Below are positions 9,795 through 36,735 of a stretch of DNA of 64,000 bases, in pieces. The translations under genes and the position numbers were made by a program. Location: assembly GCF_020745735.1 (NCBI RefSeq), contig NW_026867442.1, forward strand, positions 49,040 through 113,039, given 5' to 3'. This DNA comes from Hemiscyllium ocellatum (Eukaryota). The notes beneath the pieces are model-generated. The model had not been told where the DNA came from. It was given only the letters and a program-made list of their open reading frames with translations, and ran no database searches. The first letter of the stretch is position 1, and the number at the start of each line of letters is the position of its first letter.

Positions 9795-9796
<2 letters not shown>

Positions 9797-11415: not shown

Positions 11416-11428
11416 GCCCCACACACTT

Positions 11429-11465
<37 letters not shown>

Positions 11466-12260: not shown

Positions 12261-12479
12261 TTACCTTCAATCTCTGTACCAGGTTTTTAAGTCTTTTACT
12301 CATGTAAAAAGTGCCATCCTACCTACCCTGTCACTGTTCTGAATAATCTTATCCCTCTCTATCAGGTCCCTGTTAAGCCTTCACTGCTCAAAGCTCACAT
12401 TCAGGCAGCATCCTGGGAAATCTCCCTGTACCCTCTCAGGTACAATCACATTCTTCCCAGAGTGTGGTGACCAGGACCT

Positions 12480-13200: not shown

Positions 13201-14019
13201 AGTGTCCTGGGTGGTGACAGTTGAATGCAGGATAAATCTCCCTCTGCTCTGCCCCACTAATGGATGTTAACCCTTGACCCCTGTCTTCCCCTGGAGTAAG
13301 GCCCTATTTCCACGTTGACCAGGGTTTGGCCTCTCTCAGGAAGATGCACAGATTCTGGTCAAATGAAGGGCAGTTCTGTGCTGTTCTGTGCTGTTGGCCT
13401 ATTCTCACTGGGGACTGATTTGGACACAAAGCTCATTCCATGAAGGCCTAGCAGAGAGAGGAGATCCTCAGGCCATCAGCGTGAGTTGGAGGCACAGGAC
13501 AAGCTCTGACCCACTGACCCATCCTGTCCATTCACAACATGTTCCAATCCCTTCCCCTCTCCTTCCCCTTCCATGGTCAGTCTTTTCTGAAATGGAGTGG
13601 TCCCTTCCCTGTCTCACACCAAGGAGGAGATGGACAGATATTTAATGGGTAATGGGTTAAAGGATGATGGAGAGTGGGCAGGAAAGTGGAGTTGAGTCTG
13701 AGATGGGATCAGCCATGATTGTATTAAATGGTGGAGTGGGCTCTAGGGGCTGAATTGCCTGCTCCTGCTCCTAGTTCTTATGTTCCTCCACCCCCTCCCC
13801 CATCCCTCTTACTGCAACTTTGTGAACATTCTTGGAATGTTTGGACATTGAAGGAGTTATGTGAATTCAAGATTTGTGTGGATTTAATGTGGGGACAGAA
13901 TTGCACACGGGCTGTGATAGCTCCTGCGGTTGAATATCCTGCTGGCAGGCTTCCGCCTTCCATATACAGAATGGGGAAGTGGGGGAGGTGGGAATGTACT
14001 GCCGGGGTACACGGCACTG

Positions 14020-16150: not shown

Positions 16151-16419
16151 AAACCAAATGAAGTGTCCCTCAGGAGGGGAGAGGGAATGTTCAGGATCCT
16201 GAACTCCATTTCCCAGCCCAGGCAGTTTGTCTCCCAATGAATGAATGAGATGCCAATTTGAAGCCCAGGTTCAGGGCAGTCTCACTCTGTGGACATGAGG
16301 TCTATAAGAGGGAATTGGAGATTGAGCTGTAAAGGAAAGATTTGCTGGGTTATGGGGAGAGAGAGGGGAGCAGTGGGATTCACTGGGTCATTCAAAGGCA
16401 TGATGGGCTGAATGGCCTC

Positions 16420-16680
16420 CTCCTGTGCTGTCAGATTCCAGGGAGTGCAGACAGTTTACAGTTTTCTCCCATCTCAGTAACAAACACCCAGCTGCTCCAA
16501 GCTCTTTCTTTCACTTCCTCTCTTGATGAAGTTTCAACCTTGTGCTCTGACAGTCTTTGCATTTATTTTTTACACTGGGGCTTTCTGCTGTGGTCAGAAT
16601 CTCTAATAATAAGTGTTCAATCAGTGACAATCACAGCAGCTAAGAGCAGTCAGGACTGAGGAGCCAGGCTCACTGGGAAA
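16420..16680. promoter_or_regulatory. Conserved non-coding island, candidate B-cell enhancer (copy 1)
   Basis: About 95% identical to inverted 36480-36735; PU.1-IRF composite TTTCACTTCCTC 16509-16520, E-box 16489-16494, RUNX TGTGGTC 16589-16595. Confidence 0.5.
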
Positions 16681-16689
16681 CACATTGGG

Positions 16690-17150
16690 AAGATCAAAGC
16701 CATCCTCTTCAGCTCCTGGTACAAGCTCCATCCCTCTCCCTGAGCACTGTCTGCTGCTCAACCAGACTCTTTACAACTTTGGCCTCATCTTTGGGGCTGA
16801 TTTGAGGCCCAAATCCTCCACATCACAATTATCAGCCACTGAAAATCTCAACCATGTTTTTGTGACCATTCCAATGATATCCAGGCCCACATCACAGCCA
16901 CTGACTTCCGTAAACATCAGCTCATCCCAAACTCTGCTGTCTGTTTTCAAACTCACACCAAGTCCACCCCATACCCCTGCCCAAACCTCCCCACCCCACC
17001 ATGACCACCACAATCCTCACTGACTGACATAAGCTCCTGGTCCAGCAACACCTCGATTTTTAAATTCTCATCCTTGTTCTCAATCTGCTCCCTGTTCTTC
17101 CACCCTCCCTATCTCTGTGACCTCCTCCAAGCTGCCTCACTCAGTGTGAT
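16690..17150 (+). mobile_element. L2-like LINE relic
   Basis: Mirror copy 36020-36470 encodes LQLIQNSAARI, an L2 RT C-terminal motif. Confidence 0.6.
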
Positions 17151-17349
17151 CAATAATCTTGGATATATGGCTCTCTGTTTCTTCATCCAAATCATTGAGA
17201 AATATCGTGAAAAGCTGAGGTCCCAGCACAGATCCCTGGGAATACCACTACTCACATCTGTCTCATTGGAACACACGCACATTATCCTTCCTCTCTGTCT
17301 CCTAGACAGACCCATTCCTGACCCAAGGTAAATGCATTTCTCAAATTCC

Positions 17350-17500
17350 ATCCAATTCCATGATTTGGAGATGCCGGTGTTGGACTGTTATGTAAATGTT
17401 AAAAATCACACAACACCAGGTTCTAATGCAACAGGTTTGTTTGGAAGCATTAGCGTTTGGAGCACTGCTCCTTCATCAGATGGTTGTGGAGTGTAAGATC
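17350..17500 (-). mobile_element. Penelope-like pLTR fragment
   Basis: AAAAATCACACAACACCAGGTT..GGAGCACTGCTCCTTCATCAG; degenerate hammerhead core on the minus strand. Confidence 0.65.
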
Positions 17501-17919
17501 TGAACCAATGCTTCTTTTGTGGAACATACTTAAATGTTTTTTGGAAGTCCCGATAGACAATAGCCATCGACATTCCCTTATATCCCAAACTAATGAGCTC
17601 CTAACAAAGTGTAATCCGGTTATTTAAAGATGTCTGAACCTTTGTCAATCCAGGCTGTCTCTCTCGGACCAGTTCATATTTGTCCGTTATTCTGCCTCTA
17701 AAAACAGACTCAATCACTTCCTGACAACAGACATTCAATGGAGATGTTCATTGTAATTGAGGCTCGTAAACAGCTAGCACTGACACGAGGAGCTGAACAG
17801 CCTCCTCCTGTGCTGGCATCTTCTCTGTCTCCTTGACGGAAATATTTTACAGATTAAAAACTAAAGACCAGCAGCAAATTTTAAAATATAAATTAAAATC
17901 TCCTCAAATAATTTCCACA

Positions 17920-20900
17920 TACAGGGCCGGGCGATGTGTAGTAATTGCACAATGGGGAAGGTGGTGGAGCCCATTGTAGCTCAGAGTGACCACATCTACA
18001 GCAAGTGTTGGTTGCTCAAGACACTCCAGCTCCGAGTTGATGAGCTGGAATCTGAGCTTCAAACACTGCGACACATCAGGGAGGGGGAGAGTTACCTGGA
18101 CACTGTGTTTGGGGAGACAGTCACACCTTGTAGGTTAAATACTTCAAATTATGGCCAGTGGTCAGGGACAGGAGGGTGTGACCAAAAGTGAACAGGCCGA
18201 TGCAGCCTGGATTTAGCCTTACAGGTGCCTCAGCTCCTTGTCCAACAGGAATGAGGTACTTGCTCCCTGTGTCAATGAGGAAAAGGATTGTCGGGAGAAT
18301 GGGCAAATGTAGTTTGAGGATTTTGGTGATAGTGACCATAACTCTGTAAGTTTCAAAGTCATTATATAAAAAGATAAAGATAGGGCAGAAATTATAATGT
18401 CTAAACTGGGGAAAATGTAGGGATGTGTAGGTTAGGTGCATTAGCCATGGGAGATGCAGATTTACAGGGATAAGGTAGGGAGACAAGTCTGGGTGGGATG
18501 CTCTTCAGAATGTTGGTGTGGACTCATTGGTCTGAATGGCCTGTTTCACACTGTATGGATTCTATAATTCGATGACTCCTAAGGGCAGTCATTGCTGGCT
18601 TGGCCAGAGATGTCCATTTCCTATGAATGAATGAAGGAAACCACTGCACCATGGTCCAGGAGACCACTCAGATTGGGGGAGCATAAAGAAAAGAGGGGTC
18701 TTGATAATGAGGGGAACTGATAGCATCCTTTGTGAGCAGGATTGAGAGCCCCACATGGTGTGTTTCCTGCCTGGTTTCAAGGTAAGGGCATCTCGAGCCG
18801 GCTTTTAAGTATAACAGACCTGGGGGTGGGGGGGGGGGGGGGGTTGAGGATCCAGTTGTTGTTGTCTGTGTTGGGACCAACAACATCAACAAAAATCGGC
18901 AAAAGGCCCTATTTGGACAATATCAGGAAAGCTATCAGAAGGATATTGATTAGACAGATGGAGAGAAATAAGAAAGAGGTGAATACAGCATCAGTGCTGA
19001 GGAACAGATTCCAGTGAATGGACCAAATACGAGTTCTATATCCGAATGCACGGAGCGTAAGGAATAAATACAATAATCTGCAGGCACAAATTCAAATTTA
19101 AGATTGTGGTATCGGATCAATTACTGAGCCATAGTTGCAGAATCATTCAGATTGGGAACGATATCTATCGGGTTAGAAGGTTCACAGGATGGATATAGGG
19201 AAATGGCAGAAGAGGTGGAGCAGCTTCATTGATGAGGGAAAAAATGGCTTCAATGGTGAGGGAGGTCATAATGAGGAGAAAACATTCAGTGGGACTGAGG
19301 AGCAGGAAAGGATCGAAAACTGTAATAGATGTTGGATACAGACCCCCCTGACAGCAGCTCTGAGGTGCTGGATTATATAAATGGAGGAATTAGACAAGTG
19401 TGTAGCAAAGCCAGTGTATTATTAATGGGGAAGTTTAACTTTAACTTAGATTGGGAGACAGACAAGCCCTCTGTCAGAAAGGTAGTGAATTGCTGCTGTG
19501 TGTCCAGAATAGTTTCCAACAGCAATAGGTCCTGGATACAACAAGGGGACAAGCAATATTGGAATTAGTAATGAATAATGAGCCAGATTTAGTTTGTAAC
19601 TATTTGTGCATGAACATTTATCAAATAGTGATCATAACATGATCTAGTTCAGTGTCGCATTTGAAAGTAAAAAGCATGAATCAGCTGCTAGAATTTGAGA
19701 TTAAGGTAAGGGCTGATTTTAACGAGATGCGACAGAGACAGTCCACAGTAAACTGGGAAAATCTGCTCATGGGTAAAACAACTGAAGAACAGTGGGGAAT
19801 ACTTAAAGGAACATTCAGCACAAAACAAAGCCAGTTTATACCTGAGAGGGAAAAGCGAACAAACAACAATGGTCAATTAAAGAGATAAGGGAAAGAATAA
19901 AATGTTTAAAAAAGGCTTACAGAAAAGCCCAAAAAAAAGGACAGATTCCGCTGAATGGGAAGGATACAAAAGGGCCTCATATCAGCTTCTAAGAGCTACC
20001 ATAAGGGATTCTGAAAGGAAACATGTAAGGGATAACAAAATCAATAAGGAGAAATGTTACAGTTCCATAAAAGCGAAACTGGGAGGTCAGGAGCAATGTT
20101 GGCCGTTAAAGACTGAAAGTGACAATGGGGAAATGACAGCCATGTTAAATAAATACTTTACCTCAAGATTTGCAGCAGAAAAGGAAGAGGACTTGCCTGA
20201 AGTCCCAAAGGAATTAACAGAGGATCTGTGTCAGGGACTGATTAGATTCCCTGCAGTGTGCAAACATGCCTTTTGGCCCAACCAGTCCACACCGACCCTC
20301 CGAAGAGTAACCCACCCAGACCCATTTTCCCTCTGACTAATGCACCTAACGCTATGGGCAATTTAGTATGGCCAATTCATCTGACCTGCACATCTTTGGA
20401 TAGTAGGAGGAAACCCATGCAGACAATGTGCAAACTCCACACAGGCAGTTGCCCAAGGCTGGAATTGAACCTGGGACCCTGGTGCTGTGAGGCAGCAGTG
20501 TTAACCACTGTTTCACCTGAATAAAGTTAATGTCAATAGAACATGTGTAATAAGGAAAATAATGGAACTAAAGAGTGACAAATCCTCAGGACCTGAGGAT
20601 GATAAAGTAGTCATAGACCACATTGCAGACACCCTGACTATAATCTTTCAGAGTTACCTGGATTCAGGAGTCGTACCTCTGAATTGGAAAATTGCAAATT
20701 TCATTTCACATTTAACAAGAATGTTAGAGAAAAACCAGGGAATTACAGGTCACGAAGCCAACGTTTGTGGTGTGGAAATTGTTGCTGTCTATAATCAAGG
20801 ATGGGGGTAACTGAAGACCTTGAAAATGGTCAGTTAATCAGGGAGAATCAACATGGATTCATGACAAGTTGGTCATGGTGAAAAAAACTCATTGAACATT

Positions 20901-21250
20901 TTTGAAGAGGAAACAAAATTACTGGACACAGTAATGTCAATGGATGTTGTTTATAGGGACTTCCAGAAGGCATTTGATAAAATCCCATGTAAGAAACTGT
21001 CAACTCAGTTAGAAATCCACAGAATTGAGGCTAAAATACTGCCATACCGAAATTGGTTGACAGGTGACAGAAAATAGGGATCATGGATAAGTGCTGAAAT
21101 TGGCAGGATGTGACAAGTCGTGTCTAATAGGAATGTGTGCGCACACCTCAATTATTTACATTATTTATTAATGCATTGGATAATGGCATAGAAAGTCAGA
21201 TACTCTAGTTTGCTAATGACACAAAGTTAGACAGCTTTGTAGGTAGTGTT
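17920..21250 (+). mobile_element. Decayed CR1 ORF1 and ORF2 fragments with nested SINEs
   Basis: CSKCW..LQLRVDELESELQTLRHI-type ORF1 (17934-18191); MDVVYRDFQKAFDKIP RT motif (20892-21077). Confidence 0.75.
20240..20518 (-). mobile_element. HE1-like tRNA-derived shark SINE
   Basis: tRNA-like head (CAGTGGTTAACACTGCTGCCTCACAGCACCAGGG), central TGTGTGGAGTTTGCACATT domain, LINE-derived tail. Confidence 0.8.
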
Positions 21251-22229
21251 CATAGAGTCAGAGAGTCAGCATTCATCCAGTGCAATCTTTAACAGAGTAT
21301 AATTTATCTTTGACATAGAACTCCTTGACTCCATCTCTCTCACTCATTCTCTCTCCCCACCCCTCTCTAACTCAGCTGCATAGATCTCACTCTGAGTTCA
21401 ATTCCTCTTTCTCTGTCCAAGCTCTATCCCCCTCTCTCTTAGTGCTCCATCTCTCTCTCTCTCTCTCCCTGTGCTCCATCTCTCTCTCTGTCTCTCTCTC
21501 TCTCTCTCTCCCCCTGTGCTCCATCTCTTGCTCTCTAAGCCGTATCCCTCCCTCCATTTCAGCTGCTGGGAGTTCGATCTGAGCCAATGCCAGTGAATCC
21601 CATGGAGAATAATGACGGGATATTTGGAGTGTGAGTTTGATGATGTAAATGTGAACCATTGCAGCAAAGACATTACAGATGGTTTGTACGATCAGCACAG
21701 CCCAAACCAGAGCATTGTGTCAATCAACACAGAACTAATGAAAGCTTCAATAAAATAATTATAAATGCGATTCTCAGAGATATCATTATTCTAGTTACAA
21801 ATGGCTGTTTCTCAGTGAAGATCCATCCTGCTGAATATTAGATACAGCTGGGCTTTGAAGAAATATTGGGCAGATGGAGTGTAATGTGGGGGAGTGTGAC
21901 CTTGTTCACTTTCACAATAATCATTCAAATGTGACTGGAGAGTTGTTAAGTCCACAGAGCAAAACTTGCCATTGGGTATAATCCATTAGGTGTGATAAAT
22001 ACAGAAACTCGCTTCGTTCTAGTTATCAGTGAGTTCTTGTCAACATCCTTTTAACAAATCAATTTTATACAAGAATGACATACAACAAACCCTCTCTATA
22101 CAACCTTCTCAGCTGGGAATAGGGCATCCCATATGCCTTCTTCACCACCCTGTCTAGCTATGCTGATAACTTCCGGGATTGATGGAGTTGTACACCAAGG
22201 TCCTTTTGTTCCTCAGTACTCCCAAGGAA

Positions 22230-23900
22230 CATAAGAACATAAGAACTAGGAGCAGGAGTAGGCCATCTGGCCCTTCAACCCTGCTCTGCCATTCAATAAG
22301 ATCATGGCTGATCTTTTCATGGACTCAGCTCCACATTAGACCATAAGACAAAGGAGTGGAAGTAAGGCCATTTGGCCCATCGAGTCCACTCCGTCATTCA
22401 ATCATGGGTGATGGACATTGAAGGACAGTTACCCGCACTCTCCCTGTAGCCCTTAATTCTGTCCAAGATTAAGAATTTATCAATCTCTGCCTTGAAGACA
22501 TTTAATATTTCAGCCGCCACTGCGCTCTGTGGCAATGAATTCCAAAGGCCCATCACTCTCTAGCTGAAGAAATGTCTCCTCAGTTATGTTTTAAACTGAC
22601 CCCCTCTAACTCTAAGGCTGTGCCTACGGGTCCTAGTACTCCCACCTAATGGAAACAATTTCCCAGCATCCACCCTTTCAAAACCATGCATCATCTTGTA
22701 AGTTTCTATTAGATCTCCCCTTCTAAAGTCGAATGAATACAATCCCAAGATCCTCAGCCATTCATCATATATTAGGATTACCATTCCAGGGCTCACCCAT
22801 GTGAATCTCCACTGGACACGGCCCAGTGTCAATATGTCCTTCCTGAGGTGTGGGGCACAAAAGTGGACTAAATGGGGCCTAACCAGAGCTTTATAAAGTC
22901 TCAGTAGCACATCTCATTTTACATTCCAACCCTCTTGAGATAAACTGGAGAAAGTGAGGACTGCAGATGCTGGAGATCAGAGCTGAAAAATGTGTTGCTG
23001 CAAAAGTGCAACAGGTCAGGCAGCAACCAAGGAGCAGGAGAATTGATGTTTCAGGCATAAGCCCTTTTTCATTCCTGCTGCGCATTTTCAGCAACACATT
23101 TTTCAGCTCTTGAGATAAATGACAATATTACATTTGCTTTCTTAACCACGGATTCAACCTGCAAGTTAACCTTTAGAGAATCCGGGACTAGCATTCCTCG
23201 ATCACTTTGTACTTTGGCTTTATGTATGTTCTCACCGTTTAGAAAATTGTCCATGCCTGTAGTCTTTTTTCTGAAGTTCAAGACTTGGCATTTACTCTCA
23301 CTGTATCTCTTAATTCCTTTATTGTTCAAAAAATCTACTTAGCTTTAAAACATTTACTGAAGTAGCATCAATTTCTTCATTGAGCAAGGAATTTCATAGA
23401 TTTATGACCCTCTGGGTAAGAGGTTCCTTCTCAATTCAGTCCTAAATCTGCTCCCCCTAATTTTGAGGTTAAACCCTCTTGTTTTAGTTCCACCTGCCAG
23501 TGAGGACATCCTCTCTACTTCTGTCTTATCTATTCTCTTTATAATTTTATTTGTTTCTATAAGATTCCCCTCATTCTTCTAAGTTCCAATGAATAGATCC
23601 CAGTCTACACAGTCTCCCTTCATAAGCGAAACCCCTCCACCCCAGAATCAGCCTGGTGAACTTTCTCTGCACCCCTCTAGTGCCAGTATTGCCTTTTTCA
23701 AGTAAGGAGACCATTACTGCATGCAGTACTCCAGGTGTGGCCTCACCAGCACCCTGTACAGCTGCAACATAATCTTCCCGCTTTTTGAACTCAATCCCTT
23801 TAGCAATGAAGGACAAAATTCCATTTGCCTTCCTAATTGCTTGTTTTATCTGTAGACCAACCCTCTGTGATTCATGCATAAGGATACTCAAGGTACATGC
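22230..23900 (-). mobile_element. CR1-type LINE 3' portion
   Basis: LLRLYKALVRPHL (22584-22910) and LQIKQAIRKANGILSFI (23571-23891). Confidence 0.85.
22945..23106. mobile_element. Penelope-like pLTR fold-back insertion with 13-bp TSD
   Basis: CTCTTGAGATAAA at 22932-22944 and 23107-23119; arms GAGCTGAAAAATGTGTTGCTG and its inverse. Confidence 0.75.
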
Positions 23901-23999
23901 CTTTCATTGTGTATATCCTTCCCTTATTAGACCTCCCAAGTTGGATCACCTCAGAGGTATCAGGATTAAATTACATCTGCCATTGCTCTGCCCAATATC

Positions 24000-24850
24000 A
24001 GACTGTAGCCTGAGACCCGGTAATCCAAGATGGCCGCAGAGTCAGACACTTCAGAACGAGTTCATCTGCTCCGTCTGTTTCCTTTTCTTCTTTCTATCCC
24101 ACTTCTCTTTTCATTTTCTTTTGTGTTTTTCTTTTGTCCTTCTCCCTAATTTCTTCTCCCGGACTCGGACTCCCAGCCTCAGTCACCAGTCCTCTGACCC
24201 AGTGCAGACCTAATGATGTGGCCTCTTGGCTTGATGTGGCAGTGTCCTGGCCTGGCAAGGAGACCTTCCAGAGCTGAAAATGTGTTGCTGGAAAAGCGCA
24301 GCAGGTCAGGCAGCATCCAAGGAGCAGGAGAGTCGGCGTTTCCGGCATGAGCCCTTCTTCAGGGATACCTTCCAGCCCAACGAGGCAGTCCAACATGATG
24401 GCCTCTGTTTGATGTGGTGGCCTCTCAGCCCAGCGTGATGGTCACTCGGCCTAGTGTAGCGATCTCTGAGTGGCCCAGAGTGGTTCTCTCTCAGCCCACA
24501 TAGTGGTCCTTTCTGTATATGGTGGTCTCTCCACCCGGGAAGGCCTCAGCGTGGACTTCCGGTCTCGAGATGATGACTTAAAGAATAATCCCATGGTAGC
24601 TAAGTTCTTAAGAAATGCTGTAATGTTTGAACTTTCAGCTTTATTTCTTCATTTTCTACTTAAAACTAAAAAAGATCTGCAACGTGTAACCTTGAACTTT
24701 ATTCTTTCTTTCTACCTTGTTCTTACGATTCTGTACTGAGGTCCTTGTACCTAAGATGGCGCCTTGTGAGGTGACGTTACATACTTTTCACTGTACTCCA
24801 ATACTTTTGCAATCGAGAACACGTGACAATAAACTTAAATAAAAATCAAA
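24000..24850 (+). mobile_element. Probable non-autonomous retroelement with a nested pLTR fragment at about 24270-24365
   Basis: Tail TTTCACTGTACTC..CACGTGACAATAAA..AAATCAAATC resembles Rex/Babar-type LINE ends (from memory); nested CUGAAGA..GAAAC core on the minus strand. Confidence 0.4.
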
Positions 24851-25034
24851 TCAATATCAATAACACCACCAATTTATGTGGCCTCTGAAAACTTTCTAAT
24901 TTTACAATCACAGTCAATTTGTTAATGTACATTACAAACAGCAAGGGTCCCAGCCCCAGTCCCTGTCTTACACCACTGGTCACAGGCTTCCAATCACAAA
25001 GACAACCCTCCACCATCACTCTTTGCCTCATATT

Positions 25035-28000
25035 TGGATCCAATTTGCCAAAATGCCTTGGATCCCATGGGCTCTTACCATAACTCCAGGAAAGGCAAGA
25101 GAGGTAGGCAAGTAGTCCAGGAGTCTTCTGTGGTTATTCCCATTTCAAACAAGTATGCTGTTTTGGAAAATGTAGGGGGTGATGGAAACTCAGGGGTACT
25201 TAGCATGAGCAGCCAAGTTTCTGGTATTGACACTGGCTCTAATGTAATGGGAGGTACGTCGGGTTCCAAACAATCGACTGTGTTAGGGGACTCTCTAGCC
25301 CGAGGTACAGACAGACATTTCAGTGGCCAGCAGTAAAAAATCAGAATGGTGTGTTGCTTCCCTGGTGCCAGGATCAAAGATGTCTCAGGGAGGGTGCAGA
25401 ATGTACTTAAGTGGAGAGAGACCAGCAGGAGGTCATTGTACACTTTGGAACCAACGACATAGTAAGGGAAAAGGTTGAGATTCTGAAGGGAGATTGCAGA
25501 GAGCTAGGCAGGAATTTAAAAAGGAGGTCCTCAAGAGTAGTAATATCTGAATTACTCCTGGTGCTATGAGCTAGTGAGGGCAGGAACAGGAGGATAGAGC
25601 AGATGAATGCATGGCTGAGGAGCTGGTGTATGGGAGAAGGATTCACATTTTTGGATCTTTGGAAGCTGTTTTGAGGTAGAAGTGACCTGTACAAGAAGGA
25701 CAGATTGCACCTAAATTGGAAGGGAACTAATATACTGGCAGGGAGATTTGCTAGAGCTGCTCGGGAGGATTTAAACTAGTAAGGTGGGCGGGTGGGACCC
25801 AGGGAGATAGTGGGGAGAGATTTCAACCTCAGATTGGTAAAGTTGAGAACAAAGGCAAGTCAAACAGTCAGGGCAGGCGGGGACAAAGCAGAGAACAAGG
25901 TAAGACTGATAAATTAAACTGCATTTATTTCACTGCAAGAGGCCTAACAGGGAAGGAAGATGAACATGGGGCGTGGTTAGGAACATGGGACTGGGATATC
26001 ATAGCAATTACAGAAATATGGCTCAGGGATGGACAGGACTGACCGTTTAATGTTCTAGGATACAAATGCTACAGGAAGGACAGAAAGGGAGGCACAAGAG
26101 GAGGGAGAGTGGCATTTTTGATAAGGGATAGCATTACAGCTGTACTTAGGGAGGATATTCCCAGAAATACATCCAGGGAAGTTATTCGGATGGAACTGAG
26201 AAAAAAGAAGGGGATGATCACCTTGTTGGGATTATAATATAGCTCCCCTCCAGTAGTCAGCGGGAAATTGACAAACAAATTTGTAAGGAGATTTCAGTTA
26301 TCAGTAAGAATAATGGGGTGGTTATAGGAGGGGATTTTAACTTTCCAAACATAGACTGTGACTGCTATAGTGTGAAGGGTTTAGATGTAGAGGAATTTGT
26401 TAAGTGCGTACAATACAATTTTCTGATTCAGAATGTGGATGTACCGACTAGAGACGGTGCAAAGCTCAACCTTGGAAATAAGGCAGGGCAGGTGACTGAG
26501 GTGTCAGTGGAGGAGCACTTTTGGTCAGCGACCATAATTCTATTCATTTTAAAATAGTGAAGGAAAAGGATAGACCAGATCCAGAAGTTGAAGTTCTAAA
26601 TTGGAGGAAGGCTAATTTTGCCAGTATTAGGCAAGAACTCTGAAAAGCTGATTGGGGGCAGTTGCTCGCAGGTCATGGGACAGCTGGAAAATAGGAAGCC
26701 TTCAGAAATGAGATAAATTGAGCCCAGAGATAGTATATTCTAGTTACGGTGAAAGGAAAGGCTGGTAGGTGTAGGGGATATTGGATGATGAGAGAAGTTG
26801 AGGGTTTGGTTGAGAAAAAGGATGAAGCATATGTCAGGTATAGACAGGATAGATTGTGTGAATCCTTAGATGGATACAAAGGCAGTAGGAGTACACTTAA
26901 GATGGAAATCAGGAGGGCAACGACATGAGATAGCTTTGGCAAATAGGGTTAAGGAGAATACAGAGGGGTTTTATGAATACATTAAGGACAAGAGGGTAAC
27001 TAAGGAGAGAATAGGGCCCCTCAAAGATCAGCAAGGCGACCTTTGTGTGGAGCCGCAGGAGATGGGGCAGATACCAAATGAGTATTTTGCTTCACTAACT
27101 GTGGAGAAGGATATTGAAGATATAGAATGCAGGGAAATAGATGGTGATATCTTGAAAAATGTTCATATTACAGATGAGGAGGTGCCAGATGTCTTTGAAA
27201 TGCATAAATGTGGATAAATCCCCAAGACCTAATTAGGTATACCCTAGGACTCTGTCGGAAGCTAGGGAAGTGATTGCTGGGCCTCTTACTGTGATATTTG
27301 TATCCTCAATAGTCACAAAAGATGTGCCAGAAGACTGGAGGTTCACTAATTGGTGCCACTACTTAAGAAAGGTGGTAAGGAAAAGCCAGGGAACTGTAGA
27401 CCAGTCAGCCAGACGTCAATTGTGAGGAAGTTATTGGAAGGAATCCTGAGGGACAGATTGTCCATAAATTTGGAAAGGCAAAGACTGATTAGGGATAGTC
27501 AGCATGGTTCTGTGCATGGGAAATCATGTCTCACAAACTTGATTGAGTTTTTTGAAGAAGTAACAGAAAGAATTGATGAGGGCAGAACGTTACACTGGAT
27601 CTGTATGGACTTCAGTAAGACATTCAACAAGGTTCCCCATGGAAGATTGGTTAGCAAGGTTAGATCTCATGGAATACAGTTAGAACTAGCCATTTGGATA
27701 CAGAACTGGCTCAAAGGTAGAAGACAGTGGGTGATGGTGGAGGGTTGTTTTTCAGACGGGACGTCTCTGACCAGTGGAGTGTCATAAGGATTGGTGCTGG
27801 GCAACTACTTTTTGTCATTTACATAAATGATTTGGATGTGAACATAGGAGGTAGAGTTAGTAAGTTTGCAAATGACACCAAAATTGGAGGTGTAGTGGAC
27901 AGCGAAGAAAGTTACCTCAGATTACACCAGGATCTTGATCCGATGGGCCAATGGGCTGAGGAATTGCAGATGGAGTTTAATTTAGATAAATGCAAGGTGC

Positions 28001-28785
28001 TGCAGTTAGGAAAGCAAATCTTAGCAGGACTTATACACTTAATGGTCAGGTTCTCGGGAGTGTTGCTGAACAAAGAGACCTTGGAGTGCAGGTTCATATC
28101 TCTTTGAATGTAGAGTCGTAGGTAGGTAGGATAATGAAGACGACATTTGGTATGCTTTACTTTATTGATTAGAGAATTGAGTATGGGTGTTGGGAGGTCA
28201 CCTAAACCACTTTTGGAGTATTGTGTTCAATTCTGATCTCCTTCCTATCAGAAAGATGTTGTGAAACTAGAAAGGGTTCAGAAAAGATTTACAAGGATGT
28301 TACTAGGGTTGGAGGATTTAAGCTATACGGAGAAGTTAAATAGACTAGGGATGTTTTCCCTTGAGTGAGGTGTGACCTTACAGAGGTCCCTGCTGAGGGG
28401 TGACCTTACAGAGGTTTACAAAATCATGAGGGACATGGATTGGGCAAAGAGACCAAGTCTTTTCCCTGAGCTGGTGGAGTCCAGTAATAGAGGGCATGGG
28501 TTTAGCGTAAGAGGGGAAAGATATAAAAGAGACTTGAGAAGCAACTTTTTCACGCACAGAGTGGTGCAAGTGCAGAATGGGGCTGCCAGAGGAAGTGGTA
28601 GAGGCTGGTACAATTACAACATTTAAAAGGCATCTGAATGGGTATATCAATAGGAAGGGTTTGGAGGGATCTGGGCCAGGTGTTGGCAGGTGGGACTAGA
28701 TTGGGTTGGGATGTCTGGTTGGCATGGACAAGTTGGACCTTAGGGTCTGTTTCCATGCTGTACATCTCTATGACTCTATGACTCT
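25035..28785 (+). mobile_element. Long decayed CR1 LINE (ORF1 esterase part plus ORF2)
   Basis: VIGGDFNFPNID, GKSCLTNLIEFFEEVT..MDFSKTFNKVPH, VSKFANDTKIGG motifs; (GACTCTAT)n tail. Confidence 0.92.
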
Positions 28786-28924
28786 AGAAGGAGGCTGTTC
28801 AGCCCCTTGTGTCAGTACTAGCTGTTTACTAACCTCACTCACAATGAACATCTCCATTGAATTCTGGATGAGTGGTGCTGGAAGAGCACAGCCATTCAGC
28901 CAGCATCCGAGGAGCAGCGAAATC

Positions 28925-28952
28925 GATGTTTCGGGCATAAGCCCTTCATCAG
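28925..28952 (-). ncRNA. Minimal hammerhead core, probably impaired
   Basis: CUGAUGA-A-GGGC-UUAU-GCCC-GAAAC-AUC; G-to-A change breaks the ACGU palindrome. Confidence 0.55.
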
Positions 28953-29279
28953 GAATAAAGGCAGTGAGCCTGAAGCGTGGAGAGATAAGCTAGAGGAGGG
29001 TGGGGGTGGGGAGAAAGTAGCATAGAGTACAAGCAAATGTGTCTGTGGTAGCGAGTTTGTTTCATGAAATGTTTGAAGAGCTTCAGGGCAGAGGAAATGA
29101 CCTGGGAGTTGCAGTGGGAGAGGGACTCCCTGAGATTATTGTAGAGAGAAGCTCTTCAACCATGTCATGAAACAAACTCGCTCCCACAGCCACATTTGCT
29201 TGTACTCTCTGCTACTTTCTCCCCACCCCCACCCTCCTCTAGCTTATCTCTCCACACTTCAGGCTCACTGCCTTTATTC

Positions 29280-29307
29280 CTGATGAAGGGCTTTAGCCCG
29301 AAACGTC
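29280..29307 (+). ncRNA. Minimal hammerhead ribozyme core, intact
   Basis: CUGAUGA-A-GGGC-UUUA-GCCC-GAAAC-GUC. Confidence 0.75.
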
Positions 29308-30219
29308 GATTTCGCTGCTCCTCGGATGCCGCCTGAACTGCTGTGCTCTTCCAGCACCATTAATCCAGAATCTGGCTTCCTGCATCTGCAGACATTGTTT
29401 TTATCTCTGTTGAATGTCTATTGTTGGGAAGTAATTAAATCTGTTTAGAGACAGAATGTCCGACAAATGTGAACAGATCAGAGTAAGTCAGCATGGATTA
29501 AAAAGGGTCAGACATCTTTAACTGGTTACATGTTTTAACGAGGTCACTAATGTGTGAGATAAGGGAATGTGTTGTTTATATGGACGTCCAGATGACATTC
29601 AAGGAAGTTCTGCACAAGTGTTATAATGTTATCGTTGGAACAAAGAGATGACAGATAAACATATTCTGGATCTTTCTGCACAAATGAATTCTCAAATAAA
29701 TCTCAGACATGTTGGTGAACTTGGAGTTTTATCAGAGGAAGGAGCTGAAGGAAATCAGTTGTTGGAGGAAAATGGTTCTGGGAAAATTAGAATGTCTTAA
29801 ATCAGGAGGGCTAAATAATCTATTTTCAGGAGTGCTTCAGGAAGTGGTTGTAAAATATGAGAAACATTGATGGTTATCTGTTTGTCGACTGTGGAATAGG
29901 TCCTACAAAATGGAGGGAGTTAATTTAACACGCCTATTGAAAGAGAGAGAGAGAGAGGGAAAATAAGAAATTTTAGACCAATTAGCCAGAAGTCAGCAGT
30001 GGAGAAAATGCTTAAGTTCATTATAAAATATTTTATAGCTTAGCACTTTGAAAACAGTGGCAGAACTGGACAGAGTCGGCATGAATTGTCGAAAGGGAAA
30101 TCATGCTTAAAAAATCGACTGGAATTGTTTGAGGATATAGTGAGTGGATTTGATAAGGGGGGGGGCCCATGGATATGGTTTGTTTGGACTTTGTAAGGGG
30201 AATAGATCGGCGGTTCTGT

Positions 30220-33200
30220 GGTCAAAAACAAGACTCACGAATAGCATGTTGCCTCCCAGTTGTACGACTCAGGCATGTCTCAGATCGGCTGCAGGACATT
30301 CTGAAGGGGTGGGTGAACAGCTAGCTGTGATGGTGCATGAAGGGACTGATGATATCGTAATAAATGGAATGGGGTCCTACAAGCAGAATTTATGGAGTGA
30401 GGAACCATATTAAAATGTAGGATCTCAGAGGTAGTAATCTCAGGATTGCTCCCAGTGCCATGTGCTAGTCAGAGTCGAAATGAAAATATAGGCAGGATGA
30501 ATGTGTGGCTTGAGAGATGGTGCAGGAGGGAGGGGTTCAGGTTTTTGGGACATTGGGACTGGTTCCAGGGGAGGTGGGACAATTACAAATCGAGTGGTCT
30601 ACACCTGGGCAGGACTGGAACCAGTGTCCTGAGGGATGTGTTTGATCACACTCTTGGGGAGGGTTCAAAATAGTGTAGCAGAGGGATGGGAACCAAATGA
30701 GGAAGTTAGTGGGCAATAAGGAGGGAGTAACTAAAGCCTGTCAGGAACTAGATATTGAAGTCAGCGTGACTAAGGTTAAGAGTAGGTAGGGAGCAGATGA
30801 TGAATGCAAAGGGACAGATGGTCTGAGATGCATTTGTTTTAATGTGAGAAGTGTAGTAGGTAAGGCAGAGGAATTTAGGGCTTGGACTAGTATCTGGGAG
30901 TATGATGTTATTGCTATTACTGAGACGTGGTTGAGGGAATGGCAAGATTGTTAACTAAATATCCCAGGATACAGATGTATCAGATGCGTTCGAGAGGGAA
31001 GTAAAAGGGATGGAGGAGTTGCATTACTGGTCAGAGTGGATATCACAGGTGTGGTGAAGGAGGGCACTATGGAGGACTCGAGCAGTGGGGCAATATGGGC
31101 AGAGGTCAGAAACAGGAAGGGTGCAGTAACAATGTTGGTGCTATCCTACAAGCCTCCTAACAGTGAACGTGAGATAGAGGTACAAATATGTAAACAGATT
31201 ATGGAAAGATGTAGGAGTAACAAGGTGGTGGGTGATGGAAGATTTTAATTTTCCCAACATTGACTGGGATTCACTTCATGTTAGAAGTTAAAATGGAGCA
31301 GAATTTGTAAGAAGCATCCAGGAGGATTTCACAGAGTAATGTGGAAGTAGTCTAACTTAGGAAGGGGCCATACTGGGCTGGTGTTGGGGAATGAGCCCAG
31401 CCAGGTGATTGAAATTTCAGTCGGGGATTACTTTGGAAGAGTGATCACAATTCCATACGTTTTAGAATGCTCATGGACAAAGATGAGAGTGGTCCTAAAG
31501 GAAGAGGGCTAAAGTGGAGGAAGGCCAACTATCCCAAAATTTGGAAGGAGCTGGGGAATGTGGATTGGGAGCAGCTGTTTAAAGGGAAATCCACATTTGA
31601 TATGTGGGTGGCTTTTAAAGAGAGGTTGACTAGAGTCAGGACAGACATGTCCCTGTGAAAATAAAGGATTGAAATGGCGTGATTAGGAAACGCTGGATGA
31701 CAGATGAATTTGTGAGATTAGCTAAGAGGAAAAAGGATGCATACATAAGGTCTAAGTGGCTGAAAACAGACAAAGCTTTGGAAGAATATCGTGAAAGTAG
31801 GACCAATCTGAAGTGAGGAATTAAAAGGGCTAAAGGGGTCACAAAATATCATGAAGGAAAATCCCAAATCCTTTTATTCATACATAAGGAGCAAGTGGGT
31901 GACTAGAGAAAGGGCTGGCCCACTCAAGGACAAAGGAGGAAAGATATGTGTGGAGTCAGAAAATGGATGAGATTCTTAATGAGTGCTTTATGTCGGTATT
32001 CACCAAGGAGAGGGAAATGACAGATGTTGAAGTTGGGGATAGGTGTTTGATTACTCGAGGGCAAGTCGATTTAAGTAGGGAGGAAGTGTTGGGTATTTTA
32101 AAAGGCATCAAGGTGGACAAGTCCCCAGGTCAGGATGGGATCGATCCCAGCTTACTGAGGGAAGCAAGAGAGGAAATAGCTGGGGCCTTAATCGATATCT
32201 TTGTAGCAACCCTGAACATGGATGAGGGTCCCAGAGGACTGGAGAATTGCTAACGTTTAAGAAGGGTAGCCAGGATAATCCAGGTAACTATCAACCAGTG
32301 AGCCTGATGTAGTGGTAGGGAAGCTGCTGGAGAAGATACTGAGGGATAAGATCTATTTACTTTTGGAAGAAAATTGACTTATCAGTTATAGGCAGCATGA
32401 AGTTGTGCAGGGAATGTCGTGTCTTACCAACTTTGTAGATGTTTTTGAAGAACTGATGAAGTTGATTGAGGAGGGATGGGCTGTGGATGTCATACGCATG
32501 GACTTCAGTAAGGTGTTTGATAAAGTTCCCCATGCTAGCCTGATAAAGAAATTTAAGTCGCATGGGGTCCAGAGTGTACTCACTAGATGGGTAGTGAACA
32601 GGTTGGGCAACAGAAGACAGACAGTAGTGGTGGGAGTACTTTCTCAAAATGGAGAACAGGAATCCGTGCTGGTACCGCTCTTGTTTTTGATCTACATAAA
32701 TGATCTGGAGGAAGGTATAGGTGGTCTGATTAGCAAGTTTGCAGATGACACTAAGATTGGTGGAGTAGCAGATAGTGAAGGGGACTGTCAGAGAATGCAG
32801 CAGAATATAGATAGATTGGAGAGTTGGGCAGAGAAACGGATGGATGGAGTTCAAGCCAGGCAAATGCAGTCTGATGAATTTTGGAAGATCCAAATCTGGA
32901 GTAAACTGTACGGTGAATGGAACACCCTGGGAAAATTGATGCCCAGAGCGACCTGGGTGTTCAGGTCCATTGTACCCTGGAGGTGACAACACAGGTCGAC
33001 AGAGTGGTCAAGAAGGCATATGGCACATCTTCCTTCACCAGACGTGGTATTCAGTACAAGAGTTGGAAGGTCATATTAGAATTATATCAGACTTTGGCTT
33101 GGCCACATTTGGAATACTGCGTACAGTTCTGGTTGCCACATTACCAGAAAGATGTGGATGCTTTGGAGAGGGTGTAGAGGAGGTTCACCAGGATTGCCTG

Positions 33201-33650
33201 GTATGGAGGGCACTAGCTATGAAGAGAGGCTTAGTAGATTAGGATTATTTTCATTAGAAAGTCAAATGTTGAGGGGGGACCAGATTGGGGTCTACAAAAT
33301 CATGAGAGATATAGACAGGGTGGATAGCAAGAAGCTTTTTCCCAGAGTGGGGGACTCAATTACTCGGGGGTCATGAGTTCAAGGTGAGAGTGGAAACATT
33401 TCAGGGAGATATGTATGGAAAGTTCTTCACACAGAGGGTGATTGGTCCTGGAACACGTTGCCAGTGGAGGTGGTAGAGGCAGGCACAATAGCATCATTTA
33501 AGATATATCTAGATAGATACATGGATGGGCAGGGAGCAAAGGGAGACAGAACCTTGGAAAATTGATGACAGGTTTAGATGGAGGATATGGACCAGTGCAG
33601 GCTAGTAGGGCCGAAGGGCCAGTTCCTGTGCTGTAATTTTCGTTGCTCTT
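30220..33650 (+). mobile_element. Long decayed CR1 LINE (ORF1 esterase part plus ORF2)
   Basis: MNVWLERWCRREGFRFLGHW; SCLTNFVDVFEE..MDFSKVFDKVPH..ISKFADDTKIGG (32405-32986). Confidence 0.92.
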
Positions 33651-33659
33651 TGTTCTTTG

Positions 33660-35860
33660 AACTGAGGAAGCTCAAAGGAACAGAGTGATCTTGGGTGCTT
33701 CTCCACTGATCCCTGAATATGGCAAGACAGGTTAACGGAACAGTTATGAAGGCACAGGGGACACTTGCCTTTGTCATGTCAGGTATTGGTTATAAAAGCA
33801 GGAGGAGATGGTGCAGTTAAGCAGAACATTGGTTAGGCCACAGCTGGAGTACTGTGTGCAGTTCAGGTCACCACACTGTAGGAAGGATGTGATTGCACTG
33901 GATGGGGTGCAGAGGGGAATCACCAGGATGTTGTGTGGGATGGAACCTCTCAGTGATGAAGAGAAATTGGATCAGCTCGGGTTGTTTTCTATAGAGCAGA
34001 GAAGGTGGAGGGGGGACCTGATAGAGGTGTATAAGGTTATGAGGGGAATTGGCAGGGAGGAGAGAAAGCAGCTGTTCTCCTTCTTGGGAGGGTCAATAAC
34101 AAGTTGACTCACATTCAATGTGAAAGCTAGGAGGCTTCAAGATGTTTTAAGGAAAATGTTTTTCATCCAGAGGATGGTGTGCATCTGGAATGCACAGCCT
34201 GAGAGGGGAGTTGAGGTGGGAAACCTCACAAAGTTTAAAATGTACTTGGGTGAGCAGTTGAAATGTCATAACATTCAAGCTGTGGGCCTCATGTTGGAAA
34301 GTGGGACTGGTGTAGGTTTAGTGTAGTTTGGCTGGTACACAGTTAATGGGCTGAAGGGCCTCCTCTGTACTGTGTGATTTCATGATTCTGTCGTGGGTAG
34401 TTTCAGGCTCCTTAATTGAGGAAGGATGTTCTGGCTGTGGAGGGAGAGCAGTGAAGGTTTACCAGACTGATTCCTGGGAGGACAGCACTTAGATCTGATG
34501 AGAAACTGGATCAGTTAGGATTATATTCATTGGCGCTTAGAAGATTGAAAGGAATCATATTGTAACCTTGAAAATCCGAACAGGACAAGACTAGAACAAC
34601 ACAGGGAGGATGTTCCTGATGACTGGGGAATCCAGAACTACGAATTATGGTTTAAAGAAAAGGGAAAGGTTATTTCAGACTGAGCTGAGGAGACATTTCT
34701 TTTGCCAGAGACTGGGAAGCTAGTGGGATAGTCTGTCACAGAAAGCAGTTGAGCCCAAAACATTCAATATTTTCAAGAGGATAAGTGTATTCTTAGGACT
34801 AAAGGGGTTAAATTTTATGGAGAAAAAATGGGAGCAGGGGACTAAGTTGGATGATTAGCCATGGTCATATTGAATGGCAGAGCCAACTTGAAGGGCTGAA
34901 TGGCCGCCTCTTGCTCCTAGTTCCTTTGTTTCTATGTTTGAGAGACTGTTCATAAACATGGAAACATATGGAATTATAGAGTCTTAGAGCCATCGAGTCC
35001 TACAGCACAGAGACAGGCCCTTTGGCCCAAACTGGACCGTGCTGACCAAAATGTCCATCCATGCTAACCCCATTTCCCTGCACTTGGCCCATATCCTTCA
35101 AATGTTTTCCTATCTATGTATTTGTCCAAATGTCTTTTAAATGTTGTTAATGTATCCACCTCAATCACTTCAGCTGGCATCTCATTCCACATGCGTGCCA
35201 CCCTCTGTGTAAAAATGTTGCCCCTCAGGTTCCCTTTTATTCATTCCTCTCTAAAACTAAACTGATGCCCTCTCATCCTCGTTTCCCCAACCCTCTCCAT
35301 GTCTCTCATGATCTTATACACTTCTAAATGTTCCCCCACCAGTCTCCTACGCTCTCAGAAAAAAGTCCTAACTTGGCTAACTTCCCCCTATAACTCAGAT
35401 TGTTGAGTCCAGGCAACATCCTTGCCAATTTCTTCTTGTACTCTTTCTGGTTTAGTAATATCCTTCCTATAACAAGGTGACCAAACTGAATACAATATTC
35501 CAAGTGCGACCTCACTGACATCCTGTACAATATTAGAGATTAGATTCCCTCCAGTGTGGAAACAGGTCTTCGGCCCAACCAATCCACACCGACCCTCTGA
35601 AGAGTAACCCACCTAGACCCATTTCCCTCTGACTAATGTACCTAAGACTATGGCCAATTTAACATGGCCAATTCACCTGACCTGCACATCAAACTTACTA
35701 ATCATGCCTTACAGATTCTCATCCAAATCATTAATATTGATAACAAACAGTAATGGGTCAGCACTGAGCCCTGAGGAACTCCACCCAACACAGGCCTCCA
35801 GTCTGACAAGCATCCTTCCAATATTACCTCTGCTTCCTATCATCAAGACAGTGATAGAAA
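33660..35860. mobile_element. Stack of CR1 3' fragments (plus to about 34940, minus thereafter) with a SINE piece at about 35535-35690
   Basis: LVRPQLEYCVQF and VRSHLEYCIQF motifs. Confidence 0.8.
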
Positions 35861-36019
35861 AGTATTTGTCTTTGGTTAGGAATTAGTTTGGAGATAGGAG
35901 ACAGAGAAGAGGGATAAGATGTGAACAAGATGTGAATAGTGGTTTGTGCAGGGGCCTCAGTATTTCACGATATTTCTCAATGACTTGGATGAAGGAAAGA
36001 GAGCCAATTATCCAAGATT

Positions 36020-36470
36020 GCTGACCACACGGAGTGAGGCAGCTTGGAGGAGGTTACAGAGATAGGGAGGGTGGAGAGCAGAGAGGGATTTGAGAACAAG
36101 GATGAGAATTTGAAAATCGAGGTGTTGCTCGACCAGGAGCCAATATAGGCACGGGGTGCAGGGGGTTGTGGGAACGGGACATGGTGCAAGTTTGGATACG
36201 GGCTGCAGAATTTTGGATGAGCTGAAGGATACGGAGGGCAGTGGCTGTGATGTGCATCAGCCATTGGAATGGTCATGTTTGGAGCCCCATAAACATGGCT
36301 GAGATTTTCAGTGGCTGATCTTTGTGATATGAAAGATATGGGTCTTAGATCATTCTCAAACATGAGACCCAGTTTGTAAAGAGTCTGGTTGAGCAGCAGA
36401 CAATGCTCAGGGAGAGGGATGGAGCTTATACCAGGATCTGAAGAGGATGGCTTTGAGCTTCCCAATATGT
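36020..36470 (-). mobile_element. L2-like LINE relic (mirror of 16690-17150)
   Basis: LRILQLIQNSAARI in ORF 36054-36257. Confidence 0.6.
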
Positions 36471-36479
36471 TTCACAGTG

Positions 36480-36735
36480 ACACTGGCTCCTCAGTCCTGA
36501 CTGCTCTTAGCTGCTGTGATTGTCACTGATTAGACACTTATTATTAGAGATTCTGACCACAGCAGAAAGCCCCAGTGTAAAAAATAACTGCAAAGACTGT
36601 CAGATCGCAAGGTTGAAACTTCACCAAAAGAGGAAGTGAAAGAAGGAGCTCGGAGCAGCTGGGTGTTTGTTACTGAGACGGGAGAAAACTGTGAACTGTC
36701 TGCTCTCCCTGGAATCTGACAGCACAGGAGGCTGG
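36480..36735. promoter_or_regulatory. Conserved non-coding island, candidate B-cell enhancer (copy 2)
   Basis: GAGGAAGTGAAA 36630-36641, CAGCTG 36656-36661, GACCACA 36555-36561. Confidence 0.5.

What the first reader, a model, noticed from the sequence alone, without database searches (positions are those of the whole stretch)
16420..36735. Candidate shark light-chain enhancer with PU.1-IRF, E-box and RUNX sites, duplicated upstream of each V
A 250-bp island that I do not recognise as a repeat lies 5.2 kb and 5.7 kb upstream of the two leaders (16420-16680; 36480-36735). I count about 12 mismatches in 245 bp, against about 13% divergence in the adjacent L2 relic, and the sequence on its V-proximal side is not shared. 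Both copies keep GAGGAAGTGAAA, an exact ETS-IRF composite (GGAAnnGAAA) of the type found in mammalian kappa 3' and lambda enhancers, plus CAGCTG and TGTGGTC. I do not know of a characterised enhancer for shark light-chain clusters. A per-cluster upstream enhancer would bear on how each minicluster is activated independently.
Basis: partly seen in the sequence, partly recalled or inferred. Interest (0 to 1): 0.7.

Follow-up and report, generated by a model that had tools for sequence, protein, structure and literature searches.

The report
Conserved enhancer-like block upstream of shark kappa genes
A roughly 350-base non-coding block about 5 kb upstream of each of two head-to-head shark antibody kappa light-chain genes changes two to three times more slowly than the DNA around it and keeps the binding-site set of bird and mammal light-chain enhancers, so it is probably each gene cluster's own B-cell switch, although no activity has been measured.

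Summary
The island is real. The two copies are inverted and lie in a ~17 kb palindromic duplication holding two head-to-head kappa clusters. Their V-proximal edges are 5.1 and 5.6 kb upstream of the leader ATGs. The shared block is about 354 bp, not 250.

Other kappa clusters fetched from a Chiloscyllium punctatum draft assembly decide it. In one (V region 80% identical) the block is 93.7% against 76.7% next door. In a germline-joined VJ cluster a 183-bp core is 86% against 67% in its flanks (P about 3e-9), level with the V and C exons. A MEF2-type site, RUNX site, PU.1-IRF composite and CAGCTG keep their positions in four copies. A fifth, uniformly decayed copy has lost all but the E-box.

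No Rfam match, no covariation, frame-breaking indels, and no copies away from clusters. My first idea, that it was merely part of a LINE relic, found no tool support.

Best reading: a constrained B-lymphoid enhancer of the Ig-lambda / kappa-3' type; function untested. The scan has already reported this block on other pieces of this genome. I could not obtain DNA from other shark species.

The parts
36378..36731 (+). Conserved upstream block, copy B, given in the orientation of its V gene
   Evidence: 94% identical to copy A and 93.7% to L001 3268-3615; nhmmer profile hit E 1.5e-126
16419..16772 (-). Conserved upstream block, copy A (its V gene is on the - strand)
   Evidence: Ungapped inverted repeat I3 with copy B; nhmmer E 1.9e-126
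36530..36712 (+). 183-bp deep core of copy B, holding all candidate factor sites
   Evidence: 86% identical to L003a against 67% in flanks, P 3e-9; ranks with V and C exons
16438..16620 (-). 183-bp deep core of copy A
   Evidence: Ungapped equivalent of B 36530-36712 (A coordinate = 53150 minus B coordinate)
36538..36547 (+). MEF2-type site TTATTATTAG (A: 16603-16612)
   Evidence: Fits YTAWWWWTAR in A, B and L001; the core TATTATTA is kept in L003a; lost in L003b
36555..36561 (-). RUNX/CBF site TGTGGTC (A: 16589-16595, + strand)
   Evidence: Invariant in four copies, inside a 26-bp invariant run; broken in L003b
36564..36573 (-). kappaB-like GGGGCTTTCT, 9 of 10 positions of GGGRNWYYCC (A: 16577-16586)
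   Evidence: Invariant in four copies. It does not meet the full consensus and was picked because it looked conserved
36630..36641 (+). ETS-IRF composite GAGGAAGTGAAA (A: 16509-16520, - strand)
   Evidence: invariant in four copies; reads GGAAATGAAG in L003b
36656..36661 (.). E-box CAGCTG, starting 24 bp after the start of GGAAGTGAAA in all five copies (A: 16489-16494)
36665..36678 (+). Invariant 14-mer GTTTGTTACTGAGA, factor unknown (A: 16472-16485)
42177..42230 (+). V promoter of cluster B, the presumed target: octamer variant ATTTACAT and TATAAA (A: 11336-11389, - strand)
   Evidence: Sequence read; leader ATG at 42291
42291..42815 (+). Leader and V-kappa exon of cluster B (J about 43342, C-kappa exon 51899-52222)
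   Evidence: tblastn with P0002 and frame reading
10742..11275 (-). Leader and V-kappa exon of cluster A (J about 10231; C lies beyond the window's left end)
1..17341 (-). Arm A of the inverted duplication
35856..51564 (+). Arm B of the inverted duplication

Best explanation
The block is a selectively constrained cis-regulatory module belonging to each kappa cluster, most likely a B-lymphoid enhancer of the Ig-lambda / kappa-3' enhancer type. Inferred mechanism: a PU.1-family ETS protein recruits IRF4 or IRF8 to GAGGAAGTGAAA, an E protein binds CAGCTG 24 bp away, and RUNX/CBF and MEF2 (possibly also a Rel protein) occupy the invariant upstream half. The complex opens chromatin and contacts the V promoter (ATTTACAT plus TATAAA) 5 kb downstream, switching on that one cluster. 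Because a germline-joined VJ cluster keeps the full motif set, the role is more likely transcription and/or targeting of somatic hypermutation than only making V and J accessible to RAG. Shown here: position, cluster linkage, slower evolution, motif retention, non-coding nature. Inferred: which factors bind, enhancer activity, and the target promoter.
For: Cluster linkage: five copies in about 120 kb, four colinear with the V region of their own cluster (L003b's cluster lies off the fetched locus), none elsewhere. Constraint: against L001 the block is 93.7% identical while the adjacent relic is 76.7% and the V region 80.3%, and it is the joint top of 342 windows. Against L003a the core is 86% while flanks are 67% (P 3e-9) and the colinear average is 77%, so it ranks with the V and C exons. 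Natural control: L003b is uniformly 75-80% identical and has lost the EICE, RUNX and MEF2 sites. The distances fit roughly half the neutral rate in constrained lineages. Motifs: 0 of 25 a-priori motif columns vary against 39 of 158 others, P = 0.0015. EICE-to-E-box spacing is fixed at 24 bp. No other 183-bp window of the 64 kb combines EICE, CAGCTG and RUNX. TE insertions in L001 land just outside both edges of the block. Non-coding: single-base indels in the core, no Pfam or homologue hits for the antisense ORF. Not an RNA: no Rfam family, 0 compensatory pairs. Comparator: human, mouse and chicken Ig-lambda enhancers share E-box, NF-kappaB, MEF2 and PU.1-IRF4 sites that are needed for activity, and the chicken 3'Core has a putative CBF site (PMC3972084).
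Against: There are no functional data of any kind. Inside the window the A/B identity is unexceptional. Only three further cluster-linked copies could be fetched, all from one draft assembly, and DNA of other species was not obtainable. L001's V has Tyr at the first conserved Cys, and cluster B's V has an RSS heptamer TACAGTG. The block is therefore also well kept beside possibly dead genes, which suits gene conversion better than selection. A, B and L001 show mosaic similarity within the block. The motif choice is partly post hoc, the kappaB-like site misses the consensus, and the EICE pattern is not enriched window-wide.
Confidence: 0.55

Rival explanations
1. The block has no function of its own. 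It is kept similar among clusters by gene conversion or concerted evolution, as in palindrome arms and multigene families, and the motifs are passengers.
For: Sharp identity steps at the block edges in L001 coincide with insertions, where conversion tracts would stop. Similarity among A, B and L001 is mosaic. The flank lineages (A, L001, L003a against B, L003b) conflict with overall similarity (A, B, L001 against L003), which requires sequence exchange between clusters. The block is well kept next to a V lacking Cys23 and a V with a defective heptamer.
Against: The same two non-coding patches (this block and the one 3' of J) stand out in both independent comparisons. In L003a the elevated part is only the 183-bp motif-bearing core, and its substitutions fall between the motifs. 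L003b shows what an unconstrained copy looks like.
Confidence: 0.15
2. It is a constrained cis-element of another kind: a promoter of an upstream sterile transcript, a dedicated hypermutation-targeting (DIVAC-type) element with little transcriptional effect, or a boundary element between the two head-to-head clusters.
For: An A/T-rich run (TAAAAAATAA) and TGCAAAG lie in the core. DIVAC elements use the same motif set and can act with negligible effect on transcription (PMC3972084). The two copies face each other across the spacer of a head-to-head pair, both here and in L003.
Against: No canonical octamer or TATA-plus-initiator arrangement was found, and by my own eye no CTCF-like core. The motif set is that of lymphoid enhancers. 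Nothing here separates these roles from the enhancer reading.
Confidence: 0.2
3. It is only the upstream, reverse-transcriptase-coding part of the adjacent LINE (L2-type) relic on the strand opposite to V, and its factor sites are by-products of old codons. This was my first hypothesis.
For: An ORF runs antisense through the island in both copies (16342-16659 +, 36530-36808 -) and abuts the relic. From my own memory, and untested, the translation resembles the region after the YADD motif of L2-type ORF2.
Against: No tool supports it: Pfam found nothing, the exhaustive phmmer search gave one spurious hit, the word-indexed searches found nothing, the atlas found nothing RT-like, and tblastn found no related copy in the window. 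Block and relic each occur only at the cluster-linked sites. An inert relic would not be 86% identical where its own continuation is 67%. A TE origin followed by co-option is not excluded.
Confidence: 0.05
4. It is a structured non-coding RNA gene or an exon of an unannotated gene.
For: Conserved sequence of a few hundred bases, and an antisense ORF in A and B.
Against: No Rfam match better than E 0.5. The RNAalifold covariation term is unfavourable, with 0 of 50 pairs showing compensatory change. Single-base indels break the ORF in L003a. No protein homologues were found.
Confidence: 0.03

Closest known systems
Ig-lambda enhancers of tetrapods (mouse E-lambda 2-4 / 3-1, human Ig-lambda enhancer, chicken Ig-lambda enhancer cIgLE)
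   Same: A compact module of about 200 bp linked to a light-chain gene. It has a PU.1-IRF composite site, a MEF2 site, an E-box shortly downstream of the composite site, and motifs that are conserved while the spacers drift (PMC3972084; shark sites).
   Different: It lies 5 kb upstream of V rather than downstream of C. There is one copy per V-J-C mini-cluster rather than one per locus. The NF-kappaB site is only a 9 of 10 match and sits on the other side of the MEF2 site. A RUNX site is present. Homology by descent was not tested, and no activity is known.
Mouse and human Ig-kappa 3' enhancer
   Same: It depends on a PU.1-IRF4 composite element plus E-boxes (established knowledge; motif list in PMC3972084 Figure S5 legend). 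The shark genes are kappa-type.
   Different: Position (3' of C-kappa against 5' of V), and no sequence alignment was attempted.
Chicken Ig-lambda 3'Core / DIVAC elements
   Same: Carries E-box, a putative CBF (RUNX) site and a PU.1 site, and such elements target somatic hypermutation (PMC3972084). Shark light chains are known to hypermutate (established knowledge).
   Different: Hypermutation targeting by the shark block is pure conjecture.
The same block reported by earlier follow-ups of this scan on other pieces of this genome
   Same: Same size (280-350 bp), same distance from V, same motif set, same reading.
   Different: Those notes cite two or three shark species. Here only paralogous clusters from one draft assembly could be examined.

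Membership tests
EICE-dependent Ig light-chain enhancer (Ig-lambda / kappa-3' type) | PU.1-IRF composite site GGAANNGAAA | tested here: met
   GGAAGTGAAA is present in A, B, L001 and L003a and invariant
EICE-dependent Ig light-chain enhancer (Ig-lambda / kappa-3' type) | E-protein E-box (CASSTG) near the composite site | tested here: met
   CAGCTG sits 24 bp from the EICE start in all five copies
EICE-dependent Ig light-chain enhancer (Ig-lambda / kappa-3' type) | MEF2 site | tested here: met
   TTATTATTAG fits YTAWWWWTAR in A, B and L001; L003a keeps only the core
EICE-dependent Ig light-chain enhancer (Ig-lambda / kappa-3' type) | NF-kappaB site | tested here: inconclusive
   No match to GGGRNWYYCC; GGGGCTTTCT matches 9 of 10 positions and is invariant
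EICE-dependent Ig light-chain enhancer (Ig-lambda / kappa-3' type) | Linked in cis to a light-chain gene and conserved above its flanks | tested here: met
   4.7-6.4 kb upstream of the V leader in four clusters; 86% against 67% and 94% against 77%
EICE-dependent Ig light-chain enhancer (Ig-lambda / kappa-3' type) | B-cell-specific, orientation-independent activation of transcription; factor occupancy; open chromatin | not testable with these tools
   No expression, chromatin or reporter data were available
EICE-dependent Ig light-chain enhancer (Ig-lambda / kappa-3' type) | Sequence homology to tetrapod enhancers | not tested
DIVAC (hypermutation-targeting element) | Raises AID-dependent mutation of a neighbouring transcription unit | not testable with these tools
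   Only the motif overlap with PMC3972084 is known
Dispersed repeat / LINE (L2) relic | Many copies unlinked to Ig clusters | tested here: not met
   Five copies in about 120 kb, all at cluster-linked positions. A genome-wide count was not possible
Dispersed repeat / LINE (L2) relic | Detectable reverse-transcriptase homology | tested here: not met
   Searches gave no RT hit for the island ORF or the relic ORF
Structured non-coding RNA | Rfam match or covarying base pairs | tested here: not met

The most novel reading that the evidence does not exclude
The MEF2 / RUNX / PU.1-IRF / E-box module is a working, cluster-autonomous enhancer, and possibly a hypermutation-targeting element, that shares ancestry with the tetrapod Ig-lambda enhancers. 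In that case the light-chain enhancer design would predate the split of cartilaginous and bony vertebrates, and each shark mini-cluster would carry its own copy. That would supply the physical basis for the probabilistic, one-cluster-at-a-time activation proposed for shark Ig genes.
Probability: 0.15. Interest if true: 0.85.

Novelty: new member of a known kind. Interest (0 to 1): 0.6.

Why it matters
Sharks carry dozens of separate V-J-C mini-genes, yet each B cell expresses few of them. Hsu and colleagues proposed that this rests on infrequent assembly of a promoter-enhancer complex at individual clusters (PMC2435157), but I found no such enhancer described for any cartilaginous fish. A defined 183-bp core with named sites, present once per cluster, gives a concrete object to test by ATAC-seq, reporter assays and DIVAC assays. 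It also gives an outgroup for asking how old the light-chain enhancer grammar is. The value is limited by the complete lack of functional data, and the scan has already flagged the same block several times.

Tried and rejected
(1) I first read the island as the reverse-transcriptase-coding part of the adjacent LINE relic, with the factor sites as codon by-products. No tool supported this: Pfam, the exhaustive phmmer search (one spurious repetitive hit), two word-indexed searches, two atlas searches, and tblastn inside the window all failed. The cross-cluster footprint contradicts 'inert relic', so I dropped it. A TE origin with later co-option stays open.

(2) RNA gene: rejected.

(3) Coding exon: rejected because indels break the frame.

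(4) Motif enrichment window-wide: GGAANNGAAA is at chance level, so only its conservation and context count.

(5) Fetching other clusters from chromosome-scale assemblies of C. punctatum, Hemiscyllium, Scyliorhinus, Cetorhinus and Heterodontus returned no DNA in every case.

(6) A metagenome scan for the 30-bp invariant run gave no match.

(7) My recollection that the A-type V-proximal flank is a common shark SINE was only weakly borne out. Only its first 25-40 bases recur elsewhere.

(8) A canonical octamer was absent from both the block and the V promoters. The promoter has the variant ATTTACAT.
Full report
**What is in the window**

The window holds two Ig kappa clusters head to head. Cluster A is on the minus strand: leader ATG at 11275, V exon 10742-11143, J about 10231, and C beyond the left edge. 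Cluster B is on the plus strand: leader ATG at 42291, V exon 42423-42815, J about 43342, and C-kappa exon 51899-52222.

Both clusters lie in the arms of an inverted duplication, A 1-17341 and B 51564-35856. The arms share 15 colinear blocks and are 88.5% identical over 10,251 aligned columns. An 18.5 kb spacer separates them.

**The observation**

The two 'islands' are reverse complements of each other. They form the innermost colinear block of the duplication. The homology runs 16419-17341 against 36731-35856, and the well-kept part is about 354 bp.

For 16420-16680 I count 15 mismatches in 261 bp (94.3%). Identity then falls gradually along the neighbouring stretch: 93, 89, 83, 75% per 100 bp. 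Among 316 sliding 250-bp windows along the duplication, this value sits at about the 85-90th percentile. TE-like sequence at 4761-5200 and a block 3' of J at 9515-10037 are as well or better kept.

GGAANNGAAA occurs four times in the window against 3.8 expected.

**A wrong turn**

The island carries an ORF antisense to V in both copies, and that ORF abuts the relic. The translation reminded me of the post-YADD part of an L2-type ORF2. I therefore first held the island to be just more of the relic.

None of the following gave any reverse-transcriptase signal: Pfam, an exhaustive phmmer search of 1.84 billion representatives (one spurious repetitive hit), two word-indexed searches, two atlas searches, and tblastn within the window.

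**Other clusters decide the matter**

Earlier notes of this scan pointed to the same block on other pieces of the genome, so I fetched other kappa clusters through V-exon homologues. Chromosome-scale assemblies yielded no DNA. Scaffolds of the Chiloscyllium punctatum draft assembly did. I do not know whether that is the window's own species.

- **L001.** This is a cluster whose V region is 80.3% identical to cluster B. The block (B 36378-36726) is 93.7% identical there, and the adjacent relic only 76.7%. The block is the joint top of 342 windows. Dispersed repeats are inserted just outside both of its edges.
- **L003a.** L003 is a germline-joined VJ cluster. Its colinear copy, L003a, lies 4.7 kb upstream of the leader. 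A 183-bp core (B 36530-36712) is 86% identical there, while its own flanks are 66-70% and the colinear average is 77%. The binomial P against the flank rate is 3e-9. The core ranks with the V exon and promoter (86-88%) and the C exon (85-87%).
- **L003b.** This second, inverted copy in L003 is uniformly 75-80% identical.

The distances fit a simple picture in which constrained lineages change at about half the neutral rate: both lineages constrained gives 14% divergence (B against L003a), and one constrained gives about 21% (B against L003b).

An nhmmer profile finds only these five copies in about 120 kb. BLAST with the block and with the relic finds nothing else.

**Motif footprint**

Reading in the V orientation, the four well-kept copies carry these sites (B coordinates of the first base):

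| Site | Sequence | B start |
|---|---|---|
| MEF2-type | TTATTATTAG (core only in L003a) | 36538 |
| RUNX (opposite strand) | TGTGGTC | 36555 |
| kappaB-like (opposite strand) | GGGGCTTTCT | 36564 |
| Octamer-like | TGCAAAG | 36589 |
| ETS-IRF composite | GAGGAAGTGAAA | 36630 |
| E-box | CAGCTG | 36656 |
| Invariant, factor unknown | GTTTGTTACTGAGA | 36665 |

The relative positions are the same in the four copies, and the EICE-to-E-box spacing is 24 bp in all five.

L003b has lost the EICE, RUNX and MEF2 sites and keeps only the E-box. No other 183-bp window of the 64 kb combines EICE, CAGCTG and RUNX (this test is post hoc).

**Alternatives**

- **RNA gene.** No Rfam family matches, and 0 of 50 predicted pairs show compensatory change.
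- **Coding exon.** Single-base indels in the core of L003a break the antisense frame.
- **Gene conversion.** This remains a serious partial rival. The V-proximal flank comes in two lineages: A, L001 and L003a share one, and B and L003b share the other. That grouping conflicts with overall similarity and so implies exchange among clusters. L001's V lacks the first conserved Cys, and cluster B's V has the heptamer TACAGTG, so the block is also well kept beside possibly dead genes. Against conversion alone: the same two non-coding patches stand out in both comparisons; in L003a only the motif-bearing core is elevated; and its substitutions fall between the motifs.

**Comparison with what is known**

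Human, mouse and chicken Ig-lambda enhancers share conserved E-box, NF-kappaB, MEF2 and PU.1-IRF4 sites, with a further E-box downstream in mammals. The chicken 3'Core has a putative CBF site. These sites are needed both for enhancer function and for targeting hypermutation (PMC3972084).

The shark core has the same set, except that its NF-kappaB site is only a near match. It differs in lying upstream of V and in being present once per mini-cluster.

Searches of the paper library found no characterised Ig enhancer in cartilaginous fish. The shark heavy-chain exclusion paper postulates a limiting promoter-enhancer complex per cluster without naming an element (PMC2435157).

**Verdict**

The block is a real, constrained, cluster-linked non-coding module with a lymphoid-enhancer site set. 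It is most likely each cluster's own B-cell enhancer (confidence 0.55). Its retention in a germline-joined cluster points to a role in transcription or hypermutation rather than recombination alone. Function is untested.

The scan has already reported this block on other pieces of this genome.

Noticed in passing
window 43446-43936 (B) and 9515-10037 (A): A second conserved non-coding block starts about 100 bp 3' of J. It is 97-98% identical between A and B, 94-97% to L001 and 83-85% to L003, against a 65-72% background. It holds CAGCTG and two RUNX-type sites but no EICE, plus a (CAG)n run. It is a possible J-C intron control element.
   Followed up: partly
window 42816-42850 and 42408-42815: Cluster B's V has the RSS heptamer TACAGTG instead of CACAGTG, and its FR2 reads AWSQQ. 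Cluster A has CACAGTG, a 12-bp spacer and the nonamer ACAAAAACC. Cluster B may be unable to recombine.
   Followed up: partly
L003 10133-10576: Germline-joined VJ kappa cluster: V runs straight into FGKGTKLQLSK with no RSS heptamer nearby.
   Followed up: partly
L001 10133-10519: This V exon has Tyr in place of the first conserved Cys (…TATLTYKSS…). It is either a pseudogene or a draft-assembly error.
   Followed up: no
window 1-17341 / 35856-51564 and L003 29-2118 / 4707-5298: The head-to-head pairing of kappa clusters recurs in L003, with the inner boundary at nearly the same sequence position (B about 35856-35950). The spacer is 2.6 kb there instead of 18.5 kb. The two flank lineages (A-type, B-type) are shared between the window and L003, which suggests an old inverted pair kept similar by exchange between its arms.
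   Followed up: partly
window 28861-29084 and 29148-29371: An inverted repeat with 224-nt arms, 93% complementary, separated by 63 nt, in the spacer between the clusters. It is probably a hairpin-forming repeat element.
   Followed up: no
window 52315-52791 and 57926-58405: An inverted repeat of about 480 bp at 85-90% identity lies just downstream of the C-kappa exon of cluster B. Its nature was not examined.
   Followed up: no
window 8089-8260: A run of 172 N (assembly gap or mask) inside a repeat-rich part of arm A. It was left as it is.
   Followed up: no
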